Shown here in pieces: positions 7,470 to 11,641 of a DNA stretch of 64,000 bases (positions are counted from its first letter, which is position 1; the number at the start of each line of letters is the position of its first letter). The stretch comes from Bugula neritina (lineage: Eukaryota; Animalia; Bryozoa), in the NCBI GenBank assembly GCA_964035545.1, contig OZ037772.1, positions 4,902,233 through 4,966,232 of the forward strand. Direction: 5' to 3'. The position numbers were made by a program, and so were the translations under genes. The notes below the pieces were generated by a model that was not told the DNA's origin, searched no databases, and saw only the letters and a program-made list of their open reading frames with translations.

Positions 7470-7540
7470 TACACACACACACACATATATATATATATAT
7501 ATATATATATATATATATATATATATATATATATATATAT

Positions 7541-7935
7541 AAATAAGTATACGAGAAACATTGTTATTTATTACTTTATTAGGTAAAGTAATTACACTGA
7601 TATTTCGGGTACCACTGTACCCATCTTCAGAGTAGCAATGAATGAAATTCAAAAATTATTATGTTACGTTAGACGTTATGCATGACACAAAGAATAGAGA
7701 GTGGCAGTTATTGTAAATTATTGAAACTTAGGGAGATAATCTTATTTTATATATTACGCAGGTCAAAAATTATACTGATTTTTTTGTATAAAAAATAAAT
7801 TAGAGTTGACAAAAAAAAAATATCAAAATATAAAAACAGCAAGAATTAATGAAACTATGTGACAGTTGAGTAGTGTGGAGCTATTGATATAGTTTTAGTG
7901 GTATGGAGTAATTTTGTTTATTGAGTTGCGGTTTT
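7541..7935 (-). mobile_element. Penelope-like family B, 3' end/pLTR, inverted
   Basis: Reverse complement of about 9505-9903, flanked by TA runs. Contains an HHR at 7595-7634. Confidence 0.85.
7595..7634 (-). ncRNA. Minimal type I hammerhead ribozyme, family B
   Basis: Minus strand reads UACU-CUGAAGA-U-GGGUAC(AGUG)GUACCC-GAAA-UA-UC^-AGUG. Confidence 0.7.
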
Positions 7936-7967
7936 ATATATATATATATATATATATATATATATAT

Positions 7968-8166
7968 AATGTAGTGTGTTCAGATTGTTAATGATACATA
8001 CAGTAAACTGCACTCGTCAGGTGTTAGACTAAAAATAAATAAAATCTATGAAGCGTACCGATTATTCAAATTTTTACATAAAATAAATTATCATGCTAAA
8101 CACAACGTAAAACGAAATGCAAACATAGTAGTGGATTTGGTGTTATCTATTAATTAATAAAATTGC
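7968..8166 (-). mobile_element. Penelope-like family A pLTR, inverted copy fused to the 5'-truncated element; HHR partly deleted
   Basis: Reverse complement of about 8907-9152 with an internal deletion that removes GAAA and stem III (gatacata|cagtaaactgcactcgtcagg). Confidence 0.85.
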
Positions 8167-8167
8167 A

Positions 8168-8812
8168 TGGTATGACCCCCCATTCTCCAAAAGTGTAACA
8201 AGCAACCTGGGAAAACAATTTTTTTAAATCCTGGAGGAAGAAATACCCAAAGATCACAAAGTCTACAAAATTTTCAACAAAAACAACATAAAACTCAGTT
8301 ACAGCTGCTGCAGAAATTTAAACAACATAATCAACAGCCACAATAAAAGATTACTCAACCCAGCAAACCAACTTTCTCGAGAATGTAACTGCAGAAACAG
8401 CACAGTGTGCCCACTAGATGGAAAATGCCTCACAAAGTGCATCATATACCAAACTACAGTTACAACCAAAAATGGCAGCCAACCCCAGACTTACGTGGGA
8501 ACATCAGAAACAGAATTCAAAACCAGATTGTATAACCACAAATCAACTTTTAACAACAAAACAAAAAAGAACCATACTGAATTGAGCAAATATATCTGGA
8601 AACTAAAAGACAAGAACACCCATTTTGACATAACATGGAAAATTATGAAAAAGACCAACTCATACAACAAAGTCACTAAAAGGTGCAACCTCTGCCTATG
8701 GGAAAAATATTTCATAATATACCAGCCCAGCAAATCTTCCCTTAATAACAGAAATGAGATTCTATCCACATGCAGACATGCCCGTAAGCACTACCTGGGC
8801 AACATCACATAA
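8168..8812 (+). pseudogene. PLE ORF C-terminus (GIY-YIG endonuclease) with an in-frame TAA at 8225
   Basis: CIIY...YVG dyad, catalytic R (TRLYNH), E (LWEK), LN motif and a CxCx5C linker knuckle. Confidence 0.85.
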
Positions 8813-9048
8813 CAATACTAACAATTCTCAACCATAGTACTACCTATTATAAATTACCCTTTCCATCAAACATCTAGCTTTTATAGTCTAATCCTTTAGA
8901 AAAAGAGCAATTTTATTAATTAATAGATAACACCAAATCCACTACTATGTTTGCATTTCGTTTTACGTTGTGTTTAGCATGATAATTTTCTTTATGTAAA
9001 AATTTGAATAATCGGTATGCTTCATAGATTTTATTTATTTTTAGTCCA

Positions 9049-9093
9049 ACACCTGACGAGTGCAGTTTACTGTACGAAACTATATAGTCGTGT
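9049..9093 (+). ncRNA. Minimal type I hammerhead ribozyme, family A
   Basis: ACAC-CUGACGA-GUGCAG(UUUA)CUGUAC-GAAA-CUAUAUAG-UC^-GUGU. The core is intact and stem III is palindromic. Confidence 0.85.
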
Positions 9094-9289
9094 GAGATTT
9101 TTTAAATAAAAAAATATATATGTATCATTAACAATCTGAACACACTACATTATATTAGCTCTGTCCCCGTGATATCGAGCACTTTACTTTGCTGGAACTC
9201 CAACTAGATTGACAATCAGCATACATTATATATATATATATATATATATATATATATATATATATATATATATATATATATATATATAT

Positions 9290-9925
9290 TATAAATAGGC
9301 ATACGAGAAACATTGTTGATTAATTACTTTATTAATCACACAGGATACATGAACACTGCCATGACATCAATTCTAAAATTTATCAACACATCTCCACCAC
9401 TAATCATGGAAACATATCAATAGACAATGTAACAGTTTTAAATCATTCATTTAAAGGAATCCACCATCGAAAAGTAACCGAAGCACTCTACATTAAACAA
9501 ATAAAACCGCAACTCAATAAACAAAATTACTCCATACCACTAAAACTATATCAATAGCTCCACACTACTCAACTCTCACATAGTTTCACTAATTCTTGCT
9601 GTTTTTATATTTGGATATCTATTTTTTTTGTCAACTCTAATTTATTTTTTATGCAAAAAAATCAGTATAATTTTTGACCAGCGTAATATATAAAATAAGA
9701 TTATCTCCCTAAGTTTCAATAATTTACAATAACTGCCACTCTCTATTCTTTGTGTCATGCATAACGTCTAACGTAACATAATAATTTTTGAATTTCATTC
9801 ATTGCTACTCTGAAGATGGGTACAGTGGTACCCGAAATATCAGTATAATTACTTTACCTAATAAAGTAGTTAATCAACAATGTTTCTCGTATACCTATTT
9901 ATAATCAAATTGCTAGCTCGTAAAG
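9290..9925 (+). mobile_element. 5'-truncated Penelope-like element, family B (Penelope/Poseidon-like GIY-YIG C-terminus plus pLTR), preceded by a short inverted terminus (9290-9333)
   Basis: About 9339-9557 reads HRIHEHCHDINSKIYQHISTTNHGNISIDNVTVLNHSFKGIHHRKVTEALYIKQIKPQLNKQNYSIPLKLYQ* (RIxEH, EALxI, PxLN). HHR at 9806-9845. Flanked by TA runs. Confidence 0.85.
9806..9845 (+). ncRNA. Minimal type I hammerhead ribozyme, family B
   Basis: UACU-CUGAAGA-U-GGGUAC(AGUG)GUACCC-GAAA-UA-UC^-AGUA. Confidence 0.75.
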
Positions 9926-10226
9926 ATATATTTAAATATATAGATATATAGATATATAGATATATAGATATATATATATATATATATATATATATATATA
10001 TATATATATATATATATATATATATATAGATATATAGATATATATATATATATATATATATATATATATATATATATATATATATATATATAATGTATGC
10101 TGATTGTCAATCTAGTTGGAGTTCCAGCGAAGTAAAGTGCTCGATATCACGGGTGACAGAGCTAATATAATGTAGTGTGTTCAGATTGTTAATGATACAT
10201 ATATATTTTTTTATTTAAAAAATCTC

Positions 10227-10271
10227 ACACGACTATATAGTTTCGTACAGTAAACTGCACTCGTCAGGTGT
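10227..10271 (-). ncRNA. Hammerhead ribozyme, family A, minus-strand copy
   Basis: acacgactatatagtttcgtacagtaaactgcactcgtcaggtgt is the exact reverse complement of 9049-9093. Confidence 0.85.
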
Positions 10272-10727
10272 TAGACTAAAAATAAATAAAATCTATGAAG
10301 CATACCGATTATTCAAATTTTTACATAAAGAAAACTATCATGCTAAACACAACGTAAAACGAAATGCAAACATAGTAGTGGATTTGGTGTTATCTATTAA
10401 TTAATTAAATTGCTCTTTTTCTAAAGGATTAGACTATAAATGCTAGATGTTTGATGGAAAGGGTAATTTATAATAGGTAGTACTATGGTTGAGAATTGTT
10501 AGTATTGTTACCATAGTACTACCTATTATAAATTACCCTTTCCATCAAACATCTAGCTTTTATAGTCTAATCCTTTAGAAAAAGAGCAATTTAATTAATT
10601 AATAGATAACACCAAATCCACTACTATGTTTGCATTTCGTTTTATGTTGTGTTTAGCATGATAGTTTTCTTTATGTAAAAATTTGAATAATCGGTATGCT
10701 TCATAGATTTTATTTATTTTTAGTCTA

Positions 10728-10772
10728 ACACCTGACGAGTGCAGTTTACTGTACGAAACTATATAGTCGTGT
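10728..10772 (+). ncRNA. Hammerhead ribozyme, family A, plus-strand copy
   Basis: Identical to the 9049-9093 core. Confidence 0.85.
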
Positions 10773-10911
10773 GAGATTTTTTAAATAAAAAAATATATAT
10801 GTATCATTAACAATCTGAACACACTACATTATATATATATATATATATATATATATATATATATATATATATATATATATATATATATATATATATATAT
10901 ATTCATATATC

Positions 10912-10968
10912 TGAATCTGTGGACAGCAGCTGTTTCGGGATTTGTCCCCTCATCAGCAAAGAACAGAG
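10912..10968 (-). ncRNA. Retrozyme HHR copy 1 (stem I mismatch)
   Basis: UCUUUG-CUGAUGA-GGGG(ACAAA)UCCC-GAAA-CAG(CUG)CUG-UC^-CACAGA. Confidence 0.75.
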
Positions 10969-11161
10969 TACCATGGCCCACACCTTCGCAATAGTAAAAC
11001 TTATAGTTTTACTAAAGCATATTTAAAAAGTGTGTAAACTTAAGCCAGAGTCACCTAGGAGTCACGAGCATTGCAAAATGCTAGCAGCTTGAGTTTGTGA
11101 CCATGGTGAGAGTGCTCAATCATTTAATGTCATTGCTGAGCATTAAATGAGAGCGTAATAT

Positions 11162-11219
11162 CTCAATCTGTGGACAGCAGCTGTTTCGGGATTTGTTCCC
11201 TCATCAGCACAGAACAGAG
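11162..11219 (-). ncRNA. Retrozyme HHR copy 2
   Basis: UCUGUG-CUGAUGA-GGGA(ACAAA)UCCC-GAAA-CAG(CUG)CUG-UC^-CACAGA. All three stems pair. Confidence 0.9.
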
Positions 11220-11432
11220 TACCATGGCCCACACCTTCGCAATAGTAAAACTTATAGTTTTACTAAAGCATATTTAAAAGGTGTGTAAACTCAAGCCAGA
11301 GTGCTCAAGTAACTCTAGGAGTCACCTAGGAGTCACGAGCATTGCAAAATGCTAGCAGGTTGAGTTTGTGACCATGGTGAGAGTGCTTAATCATTTAATG
11401 TCATTGCTGAGCATTAAATGAGAGCCTAATAT

Positions 11433-11490
11433 CTCAATCTGTGGACAGCAGCTGTTTCGGGATTTGTCCCCTCATCAGCACAGAACAGAG
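11433..11490 (-). ncRNA. Retrozyme HHR copy 3
   Basis: UCUGUG-CUGAUGA-GGGG(ACAAA)UCCC-GAAA-CAG(CUG)CUG-UC^-CACAGA. Confidence 0.9.
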
Positions 11491-11641
11491 TATATATATA
11501 TCTAAATATATATATGTATATATATATATATATATATATATATATATATATATATATATATATATATATATATATATAAATATATATATATATATATATA
11601 TATATATATATATATATATATATATATATATATATATATAT

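What the first reader, a model, noticed from the sequence alone, without database searches (positions are those of the whole stretch)
7470..11641. (TA)n hub: three unrelated hammerhead-bearing retroelement families stacked in one microsatellite
Seen: every block in this 4 kb is separated by TA runs. The order is PLE-B(-), PLE-A(-/+), PLE-B(+), PLE-A foldback and retrozyme array. Eight intact-core HHRs plus one deleted copy occur, on both strands. Family B and the retrozyme meet again at another TA run (47.3-48.9 kb). Established: PLE pLTRs carry minimal HHRs, and non-LTR retrozymes are proposed to be mobilised by PLEs. Inference: a TA-targeting GIY-YIG PLE and its retrozyme parasite share a target, so the putative helper and parasite sit side by side. 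Read-through transcripts from either strand would be cut into defined pieces.
Basis: partly seen in the sequence, partly recalled or inferred. Interest (0 to 1): 0.8.

Follow-up and report, generated by a model that had tools for sequence, protein, structure and literature searches.

The report
Retroelements stacked in a TA microsatellite
One (TA)n microsatellite has taken five separate insertions of three hammerhead-ribozyme-bearing retroelements (two Penelope-like families and a small non-coding "retrozyme"); this is the known TA-targeting habit of such elements, and it also shows that the retrozyme uses the same target.

Summary
Window 7485-11642 contains six TA runs separating five insertion units: B(-), an inverted A pair, an inverted B pair, an A foldback and a 2.16-unit retrozyme array. 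My structural descriptor finds eight hammerhead motifs there, against none in 100 shuffles of the window. One further copy has lost its 3' half.

Family A is a Penelope-like element (PLE) of the 'Hydra' clade. It has a TERT-like RT fold, a GIY-YIG fold, and the RWK, DKT and CxCX5C motifs, and it lacks CCHH. Family B is a Penelope/Poseidon-type PLE.

TA targeting holds across the genome:
- In a 252-kb sample, 50 of 58 A ends and 59 of 62 retrozyme ends abut (TA)n. Background is about 2%.
- 180 of 265 exact retrozyme 3' tags in the genome run straight into (AT)5.
- A plain (TA)46 run 0.7 kb upstream is an unoccupied paralogue of the hub.

(TA)n preference is reported for Hydra, Neptune and Naiad PLEs, and PLEs have been proposed as retrozyme helpers.

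The modestly new part concerns the retrozyme. Its 3' junction is invariant, 15 nt past the ribozyme cleavage site, at an AUAU. This implies a circular or uncleaved RNA template primed by TA DNA.

Other agents of this scan reached the same reading for this retrozyme on other DNA of this genome. Ribozyme activity, helper identity and long-read support for the stack remain untested.

The parts
6695..6786 (.). Plain (TA)46 run. It is the unoccupied paralogue of the hub microsatellite, followed by unique segment X (6787-7469).
   Evidence: 6695-7469 matches 11543-12334 at 93.8%. X occurs only on this contig, within about 130 kb and always on the + strand, so it is a local duplication and not a transposon.
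7485..7545 (.). TA run 1 of the hub, preceded by a (CA)n stretch at 7470-7484.
7538..7937 (-). Family B PLE, a solo 5'-truncated 3' end. Minimal hammerhead at 7630-7599.
   Evidence: 98% identical to the B reference; descriptor hit
7935..7968 (.). TA run 2
7964..8166 (-). Family A, short inverted arm of insertion unit 1. It ends at reference position 2609. A 43-nt internal deletion removes the 3' half of its hammerhead.
8167..9226 (+). Family A, long arm of unit 1. It holds the C-terminal 215 codons of the ORF (8168-8812, one in-frame stop), the pLTR with a hammerhead at 9053-9089 (cleavage after C9089), and a 72-nt 'tail' at 9155-9226 that is the start of the next tandem unit.
9227..9297 (.). 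TA run 3
9288..9934 (+). Family B insertion unit: a 47-nt inverted arm (9288-9334) plus a 600-nt arm carrying the end of the GIY-YIG ORF (9342-9557), a minimal hammerhead at 9810-9841 and a short tail.
9926..10092 (.). TA run 4, partly degenerate (ATAG interruptions)
10093..10834 (.). Family A insertion unit 2, a foldback. The A(-) arm is 10093-10510 (ends at 2681, hammerhead 10267-10231). The A(+) arm is 10510-10834 (ends at 2609, hammerhead 10732-10768).
10830..10910 (.). TA run 5
10907..11492 (-). Non-LTR retrozyme array of 2.16 units; the sense strand is the minus strand. It has three type I hammerheads. Predicted cleavage after 10922, 11173 and 11444 would release 251-nt and 271-nt RNAs.
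   Evidence: The 271-nt monomer folds at -98.1 kcal/mol against -63.6 +/- 4.5 for shuffles, z = -7.75. No ORF exceeds 35 aa.
11491..11642 (.). TA run 6. It is followed by X' (11643-12334), the paralogue of 6787-7469.
47289..47346 (+). Solo 5'-truncated retrozyme 3' end with a dead core (G12 changed to A). Its 3' junction lies in TA.
48017..48831 (.). Second family B inverted pair, B(-) 48017-48492 and B(+) 48501-48831, flanked by TA runs at 47814-48027 and 48828-48869. Hammerheads at 48145(-) and 48736(+).

Best explanation
The region is one pre-existing (TA)n microsatellite that was hit at least five separate times by retroelements whose integration is aimed at TA repeats.

Family A is a young Hydra-clade Penelope-like element (PLE). 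[quoted passage not shown] Family B is a Penelope/Poseidon-type PLE. The third element is a 271-nt non-coding non-LTR retrozyme.

Inferred mechanism:
1. A GIY-YIG endonuclease nicks TA-repeat DNA.
2. The freed TA 3' end anneals to a short A/U-alternating site near the 3' end of the element RNA. The sites are ...ACAUUAUA in A, ...CCUAUUUAUA in B and ...GAUUGAGAUAU in the retrozyme.
3. This primes reverse transcription. The cDNA is often 5'-truncated or turns back on itself, giving inverted pairs.
4. The far end is joined again in the TA run.

Because every insertion leaves TA on both sides, the target regenerates and insertions pile up.

The retrozyme's fixed 3' junction lies 15 nt downstream of its ribozyme cleavage site. 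Its template therefore spanned that site: either a religated circular RNA (which I favour) or an uncleaved read-through RNA. The retrozyme borrows the enzymes of some TA-targeting PLE. Lying next to A and B is a by-product of the shared target and does not show that either one is the helper.

Shown: the anatomy, the motifs, the protein folds, and the genome-wide TA flanks and junctions. Inferred: nicking specificity, priming by microhomology, ribozyme activity, a circular template and helper identity.
For: Anatomy and ribozyme motifs.

Family A:
- An uninterrupted 708-codon frame in a natural copy.
- RWK at residue 46, DKT at 124, YRDD at 353, CxCX5C at 567, CxxC-E at 667 and CxH at 696. These are the diagnostic Hydra-clade features listed in PMC8557442 section 11.
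- RT model: pLDDT 84; best PDB matches are telomerase RTs (3du5 E 5e-9; human and Tetrahymena TMq 0.6), then other RTs.
- C-terminal model: pLDDT 83; it aligns to the I-TevI catalytic domain (Z 8.8, rmsd 2.4 A, 89 of 92 residues), T4 EndoII (Z 8.0) and UvrC GIY-YIG (Z 6.4). The next unrelated row scores Z 3.7.
- 2712 homologues in other invertebrates.

Family B: Pfam GIY-YIG at E 7e-5, above the cutoff; CCHH inside the core and no Zn linker.

TA targeting:
- Ends next to (TA)>=4: A 50/58, retrozyme 59/62, B 8/14, against 1.6-2.8% for random window positions.
- 45 of 47 A 3' ends fall at one of two fixed sites, 43 of them running into TA.
- 30 of 31 retrozyme arrays share one 3' junction. 19 of 31 5' ends lie at the exact unit boundary, and the 5'-truncated arrays still abut TA.
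- Genome-wide exact counts: 265 retrozyme 3' tags, 180 followed by (AT)5 and 38 by the internal unit junction. There are 265 B 3' tags, 76 followed directly by TA and at least 21 more after the tail.

Empty paralogue: (TA)46 at 6695-6786.

Stacks recur at other loci: C9:2725000-2739749, C5:14263917, C6:9252826, C5:8102435 and C3:14539098. That is 6 of about 24 A loci sampled.

Units within retrozyme arrays are nearly identical (median 1 difference), against a median of 4.5 between arrays.

Literature: (TA)n preference of Hydra, Neptune and Naiad PLEs; PLEs proposed as retrozyme helpers.
Against: - No enzymology and no raw RNA reads were available. Only Logan contigs could be laid, so no RNA ends or circular junctions could be seen, and no contig crosses a TA run.
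- Rfam recognises none of the hammerheads.
- The B motif is atypical, with an extra U and a 1-bp helix III.
- For inverted A pairs both outer ends are 3' ends, so TA on both sides is weaker proof of a TA target for them than for the single-orientation copies and the retrozyme.
- Exact TA counts for B explain only about 37% of its 3' tags.
- This window's retrozyme array is heteromeric: the 251-nt and 271-nt units differ at 28 positions. That does not fit a single rolling-circle copy.
- The sampled loci are the best-scoring, youngest copies.
Confidence: 0.85

Rival explanations
1. The elements make the TA runs rather than target them. The reverse transcriptase would stutter on the ...AUAUA 3' ends and add TA tails, much as some non-LTR elements carry microsatellite tails. 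The 'hub' would then be a chain of element-plus-tail units.
For: All three families end in A/T-alternating sequence. In inverted A pairs both outer ends are 3' ends. TA run lengths vary widely, from 34 to 167 bp here.
Against: A paralogous (TA)46 run carries no element. The window also holds long TA runs with none of these three families beside them (runs listed). Single-orientation, 5'-truncated A copies and 28 of 31 retrozyme arrays have TA at the 5' side as well, where a 3' tail cannot be.
Confidence: 0.08
2. The stack is an assembly artefact: repeat copies from different loci were wrongly joined across TA runs.
For: TA runs of 60-170 bp are hard to assemble. No contig in four independent runs bridges a TA run or the local A(-)/A(+) junction at 8166.
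Against: Each block is a complete, canonical PLE insertion unit with its own truncation point and the one-tail asymmetry. The same kind of stack recurs at five or more other loci with different breakpoints. The hub is bracketed by the expected paralogous flank X/X'. Contigs from short reads cannot cross such runs anyway, so their silence means little.
Confidence: 0.04
3. Local recombination or duplication, rather than repeated insertion, built much of the stack. Unequal crossing-over between TA runs or between element copies would shuffle and amplify blocks.
For: On C9 a composite unit [A(-)/A(+)/TA/retrozyme/TA] of 2587 bp is tandemly amplified four times. The hub lies in a locally duplicated region.
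Against: Here the two B copies are only 95% alike and have different truncation points. The two A units also have different breakpoints (1623/2364 against 2267/2288). At least five primary insertions are therefore needed.
Confidence: 0.1
4. Something other than a PLE mobilises the retrozyme, for example a LINE-type RT or DNA-level satellite spread. Its TA association would reflect a general fragility or openness of TA repeats.
For: The retrozyme shares no sequence with A or B. No parent PLE with the same ribozyme was found. A TA-duplicating MITE-like DNA element also sits in a TA run at 47347-47813, so TA runs attract other element types too.
Against: The retrozyme has a fixed 3' end with variable 5' truncation, which is the signature of target-primed reverse transcription. 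It shares with the co-resident PLEs the same target, the same A/U microhomology junction and a hammerhead just upstream of the junction. More than 150 PLE RT matches occur in this genome. Published work reports co-distribution of retrozymes and PLEs and kinship between retrozymes and pLTRs.
Confidence: 0.1

Closest known systems
Hydra-clade Penelope-like elements (Craig, Yushenova, Rodriguez & Arkhipova 2021, PMC8557442)
   Same: Family A shares the clade's listed features: a unit under 3 kb, a single ORF, a C-terminal GIY-YIG without CCHH, RWK, DKT, a CxCX5C linker, CxxC and CxH around the conserved E and N, a canonical hammerhead in the pLTR, insertion into (TA)n, inverted 5'-truncated partner copies, and a one-sided tail.
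   Different: The host is probably a bryozoan. That is my inference from the best named homologue (Watersipora) and the run labels. The paper lists Cnidaria, Hemichordata, Mollusca, Echinodermata and Arthropoda as hosts. The tail here is 72 nt rather than 30-40 nt, and it is visibly the start of the next tandem unit. Phylogenetic placement was not computed.
Penelope/Poseidon-type PLEs with minimal hammerheads (Cervera & de la Pena 2014, as cited in PMC7229834 and PMC8557442)
   Same: Family B has a GIY-YIG with an internal CCHH, no Zn-finger linker, a minimal type I hammerhead with a 1-bp helix III and a palindromic AUAU loop (the dimer type), and inverted-pair insertions.
   Different: B also sits in (TA)n, although it lacks the CX2-5CxxC or CxCX5C linker that has been proposed to mediate TA recognition. 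Its hammerhead has an extra U between A9 and G10.1. Only the C-terminal 252 aa or so were seen.
Metazoan non-LTR retrozymes (Cervera & de la Pena 2020, PMC7229834; Li, Clavereau & Pollet 2026 preprint)
   Same: The element is a tandem repeat of 251-271 nt with one type I hammerhead per unit. It is non-coding, 42% GC, strongly self-paired, and co-resident with PLEs.
   Different: Here the insertion target, (TA)n, and an invariant junction 15 nt past the cleavage site are visible genome-wide. Neither paper reports a microsatellite target. Most genomic copies are single units with only one ribozyme. No similarity to a co-resident pLTR was found.

Membership tests
Hammerhead ribozyme, type I | Conserved core CUGANGA ... 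GAAA with helices I, II and III and an NUH cleavage triplet | tested here: met
   The descriptor finds 8 hits in the region and 0 in 100 shuffles. A and the retrozyme are canonical, with GUC cleavage triplets. B needs one extra U after A9 and a dimeric helix III.
Hammerhead ribozyme, type I | Match to the curated covariance models (Rfam Hammerhead families) | tested here: not met
   No hammerhead family is reported at gathering score, or at E<=10 on 5 kb, or on 341 nt. Short helix III variants are known to escape general descriptors, so this lowers confidence only slightly.
Hammerhead ribozyme, type I | Self-cleavage activity | not testable with these tools
   Only contigs were available, so no RNA ends could be mapped.
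Penelope-like element, Hydra clade (family A) | RT related to telomerase RT | tested here: met
   The AlphaFold model has pLDDT 84. Top Foldseek hits are TERTs (E 5e-9), then other RTs. Pfam and PDB sequence searches found nothing.
[quoted passage not shown]
   Fold match to I-TevI at Z 8.8, and to EndoII and UvrC. Y84, Y99-G101, R110, E169 and N183 are invariant, and there is no Cys pair between GIY and YIG. The Pfam GIY-YIG model itself does not fire on A.
Penelope-like element, Hydra clade (family A) | RWK and DKT motifs, CxCX5C linker, CxxC and CxH flanking the conserved E and N | tested here: met
   Positions 46, 124, 567, 667 and 696; conserved in 30 homologues. The criteria come from PMC8557442 section 11.
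Penelope-like element, Hydra clade (family A) | Short unit under 3 kb, pLTR with a canonical hammerhead, insertion in (TA)n | tested here: met
   The unit is about 2.6 kb. For the hammerhead. 50 of 58 ends lie in TA.
Penelope-like element, Hydra clade (family A) | Groups with Hydra-clade reference RTs in a phylogeny | not tested
   No reference sequences of the named clades were available to the tools.
Penelope/Poseidon-type PLE (family B) | GIY-YIG with internal CCHH and no CX2-5CxxC linker | tested here: met
   Pfam PF01541 at E 7e-5. The sequence VYKITCPEATCQQTYVGxTGRRLSHRIHEH has no Cys linker upstream.
Penelope/Poseidon-type PLE (family B) | PLE-type RT upstream of the EN | tested here: inconclusive
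   Only the RT thumb-like C-terminal part was in the fetched DNA.
Non-LTR retrozyme | Tandem non-coding units of 170-400 nt, each with a type I hammerhead, and no LTR, PBS or PPT | tested here: met
   Units are 251 or 271 nt, with three hammerheads and no ORF over 35 aa.
Non-LTR retrozyme | Highly self-paired monomer RNA | tested here: met
   MFE -98.1 kcal/mol, z = -7.75.
Non-LTR retrozyme | Expressed as linear and circular RNA | not testable with these tools
   Contigs of runs guessed to be RNA cover the unit, but they cannot show circles or ends.

The most novel reading that the evidence does not exclude
The retrozyme's genomic footprints are direct evidence that animal non-LTR retrozymes are copied by target-primed reverse transcription from a circular (religated) RNA, and that a TA-specific PLE endonuclease/RT does the copying. 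The footprints are: insertion in (TA)n; an invariant 3' junction at an internal AUAU 15 nt past the cleavage/ligation site; a peak of exact one-lap 271-bp copies; and near-identical units within arrays. In addition, a Poseidon-type PLE without any Zn-finger linker shares the TA target. TA specificity would then not reside in that linker, contrary to the published suggestion.
Probability: 0.45. Interest if true: 0.6.

Novelty: new member of a known kind. Interest (0 to 1): 0.42.

Why it matters
It gives a clean natural example of how a self-regenerating target, a TA repeat, becomes a pile-up site for retroelements.

For the open question of who moves animal retrozymes, it supplies target-site evidence that goes beyond the published co-occurrence and pLTR-similarity arguments. 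In one genome the retrozyme and the PLEs use the same target and the same kind of junction. The junction position also argues that the template spans the ribozyme cleavage site.

Separately, a linker-less PLE sits in TA too. This makes the proposed role of the Zn-finger linker in TA recognition testable.

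Tried and rejected
- Rfam at gathering score, at E<=10 on 5 kb and on 341 nt found no hammerhead. I relied on my own descriptor with a shuffle control instead.
- Pfam, NCBIfam and PDB sequence searches on the A protein gave nothing useful. Structure prediction was needed to identify the folds.
- I looked for a parent PLE of the retrozyme. Sensitive blastn and nhmmer against 252 kb of fetched genome found no similarity to A, B or anything else. 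An exact-pattern scan of JGI metagenome contigs for the retrozyme ribozyme found nothing.
- Read laying on four runs returned only Logan contigs. The families are present in independent runs, but there are no RNA ends, no circular junctions and no bridging of TA runs or of the 8166 junction. This gives no verdict on expression, cleavage or the stack.
As a result, B flanks, full-length B and the 85% paralogues of segment X could not be inspected. Exact-pattern counts were used as a substitute.
- The profile comparison of the A and B endonucleases aligns the GIY...YIG...R..H block, but weakly: E 0.0037, probability 9%.
- From partial coordinate lists for contigs C1-C3 I counted by hand how often a retrozyme junction lies near a B 3' tag. 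Two lie within 2 kb, against about 0.26 expected. This is modest and rests on incomplete lists.

Full report
OBSERVATION

Tandem Repeats Finder gives TA runs at 7485-7545, 7935-7968, 9227-9297, 9926-10092, 10830-10910 and 11491-11642. Repeat finding and blastn against family references place five insertion units between them:
- a solo family B copy on the minus strand (7538-7937);
- an inverted family A pair (7964-8166 minus, 8167-9226 plus);
- an inverted B pair (9288-9334 minus, 9335-9934 plus);
- an A foldback (10093-10510 minus, 10510-10834 plus);
- a retrozyme array of 2.16 units (10907-11492), whose ribozyme-sense strand is the minus strand.

Rfam reports no hammerhead at its gathering score, nor at E<=10 on 5 kb or on 341 nt. 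I therefore wrote a structural descriptor requiring CUGANGA, helix II, GAAA, helix III, an NUH triplet and helix I. It finds eight motifs in the region, two more in the B pair at 48.1-48.8 kb, and none in 100 dinucleotide-preserving shuffles of the 64-kb window. The ninth, 'deleted', copy is real: 43 nt of the A pLTR, including GAAA and helix III, are missing at 8000/8001.

There are qualifications. The B motif has an extra U after A9 and a one-base-pair helix III with a palindromic AUAU, the 'minimal' PLE type that is thought to work as a dimer. The first retrozyme motif has a weakened helix I. At 47.3 kb the 'retrozyme' is a 58-nt solo fragment with a dead core. A MITE-like insert and a long TA run separate it from the B pair.

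WHAT THE FAMILIES ARE

Family A has about 360 candidate matches in the 216-Mb genome, and the listed ones are mostly 97-99% identical to the query. A natural copy carries an uninterrupted 708-codon frame. Sequence libraries do not name it, but it has 2712 homologues of about 700 aa in other invertebrates. The best named ones come from a bivalve and a bryozoan.

It shows every feature that Craig et al. 2021 list for their 'Hydra' clade of Penelope-like elements:
- RWK at residue 46 and DKT at 124;
- a CxCX5C linker at 567;
- no CCHH inside the GIY-YIG core;
- CxxC next to the conserved Glu and CxH after the conserved Asn;
- a unit under 3 kb and a canonical hammerhead.

A model of residues 100-500 (pLDDT 84) matches telomerase reverse transcriptases best (3du5, E 5e-9), then other RTs. 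A model of the last 204 residues (pLDDT 83) superposes on the I-TevI catalytic domain (Z 8.8, rmsd 2.4 A, 89 of 92 residues), T4 EndoII (Z 8.0) and UvrC GIY-YIG (Z 6.4). The next unrelated fold scores Z 3.7.

Family B's ORF end hits Pfam GIY-YIG above the cutoff. It has the canonical internal CCHH and no Zn-finger linker, so it is of the Penelope/Poseidon type. Only its C-terminal part was seen.

The third family is non-coding and 42% GC. Its 271-nt monomer folds far better than shuffles (-98.1 against -63.6 +/- 4.5 kcal/mol, z = -7.75). It occurs as tandem units with one canonical type I hammerhead each. That makes it a metazoan non-LTR retrozyme in the sense of Cervera and de la Pena 2020. 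It has no detectable similarity to A, B or anything else in 252 kb of fetched genome.

IS TA THE TARGET?

I merged all fetched loci into 45 non-overlapping segments (252 kb) and annotated them. Ends lying next to (TA)>=4 are 50 of 58 for A, 59 of 62 for the retrozyme and 8 of 14 for B. The figure for random positions of the window is 1.6-2.8%.

Of 47 A copies, 45 end at one of two fixed positions...CACACTACATTATAT or ...CAGCATACAT, and 43 of those 45 run into TA. Their 5' ends are scattered, and single-orientation truncated copies also have TA at the 5' side.

In every complete inverted A pair sampled (the four tandem repeats of the C9 composite counted once), one arm ends at the first site and the other at the second. 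The 72 nt between the two sites are the start of the next tandem unit. This is the 'tail at one end' described for PLEs.

Genome-wide exact-pattern counts agree. The retrozyme 3' tag occurs 265 times: 180 are followed directly by (AT)5 and 38 by the internal unit junction. The B 3' tag occurs 265 times: 76 run directly into TA and at least 21 do so after the tail.

There is also an internal control. 6695-7469, a plain (TA)46 run plus 683 bp of unique sequence, is 93.8% identical to 11543-12334, the last TA run of the hub plus its right flank. That unique sequence exists only on this contig, within about 130 kb and always on the same strand. It is therefore a local duplication, and the (TA)46 run is an unoccupied paralogue of the hub. 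This argues that the microsatellite came first.

Stacks like this one recur at C9:2725000-2739749, C5:14263917, C6:9252826, C5:8102435 and C3:14539098.

MECHANISM

The anatomy fits target-primed reverse transcription at nicked TA repeats. There is a fixed 3' junction at a short A/U-alternating site of the RNA, variable 5' truncation or turn-back, and rejoining in TA. Because TA remains on both sides of each insertion, the target is regenerated, and this explains the pile-up.

For the retrozyme, 30 of 31 arrays share the sense-strand junction ...GTC^CACAGATTGAGATAT|(AT)n. That is 15 nt downstream of the predicted cleavage site. Nineteen of 31 5' ends lie at the exact unit boundary, and fifteen arrays are a single unit of about 271 bp (268-271).

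A linear self-cleaved monomer would end at GUC. The template must therefore have spanned the cleavage site: either a religated circle or an uncleaved read-through RNA carrying a UA tail. Units within arrays differ by a median of 1 position, against 4.5 between arrays. This fits rolling-circle copying, but it also fits later homogenisation. This window's own array is heteromeric (251 nt against 271 nt, 28 differences). I favour the circle, at about 55:35, but I cannot decide between the two.

Nicking specificity, microhomology priming, ribozyme activity and helper identity are all inferences.

COMPARISON WITH WHAT IS KNOWN

(TA)n preference is already published for Neptune (Arkhipova 2006, as cited), Naiad and 'almost all' Hydra families. 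So are inverted or tandem insertion units and one-sided tails. PLEs were proposed as retrozyme helpers in 2020, and a 2026 preprint relates Xenopus retrozymes to PLE pLTRs. Neither paper reports a microsatellite target for retrozymes.

The hub is thus an expected outcome of known behaviour. Three modestly new points remain:
- the retrozyme's TA target and its junction footprint;
- a linker-less Poseidon-type PLE sharing the TA target;
- the empty paralogue.

Two earlier follow-ups of this scan, on other pieces of the same genome, reached the same reading of this retrozyme family. My tests were independent of them.

LIMITS

Sequencing runs were available only as Logan contigs. They show the three families in independent runs of the same organism label and in 'symbiont' and 'biofilm' metagenomes. 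They cannot show RNA ends, circles or the stack.

VERDICT

This is a new member of a known kind, of moderate interest.

Noticed in passing
window 6695-7469 and 11543-12334: A TA run plus 683 bp of unique sequence is duplicated at 93.8% identity on either side of the hub. The unit occurs only locally on this contig (9 matches within about 130 kb, all + strand), which fits the tandemly duplicated gene region noted by other readers. The upstream copy's (TA)46 run carries no insertion.
   Followed up: partly
window 47347-47813: A 467-bp MITE-like insert with terminal inverted repeats (GAAGACCTCAAAGG... / ...TTTGAGGTCTTC) sits inside a TA run, right after a dead solo retrozyme fragment. TA runs therefore also collect TA-duplicating DNA elements.
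   Followed up: no
L031 and neighbours (G000:C9:2725000-2739749): A composite unit of 2587 bp, [A(-) 353 bp / A(+) 1.83 kb / TA / one retrozyme unit / TA], is tandemly repeated four times. It is flanked by a B inverted pair and a further retrozyme array. So a stack can itself be amplified as a block.
   Followed up: partly
genome-wide: More than 150 matches to the A reverse transcriptase at 45-58% identity were found, many with open frames of 500-740 aa. The genome holds many diverged lineages of this PLE type.
   Followed up: no
window 10907-11492: This retrozyme array is heteromeric: a 251-nt unit with a 20-nt deletion sits next to a 271-nt unit, 28 differences apart. Adjacent units in other sampled arrays differ by 0-5 positions.
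   Followed up: partly
window 7000-12000: Rfam 15 covariance models report none of the eight hammerhead motifs, even at E<=10, including the three canonical type I retrozyme motifs.
   Followed up: partly
genome-wide: There are only about 1.2 ribozyme tags per retrozyme array end (265 tags, 38 at internal junctions). Most genomic copies are therefore single units with one hammerhead, which cannot release a unit-length RNA. Only a minority of arrays can act as sources.
   Followed up: no
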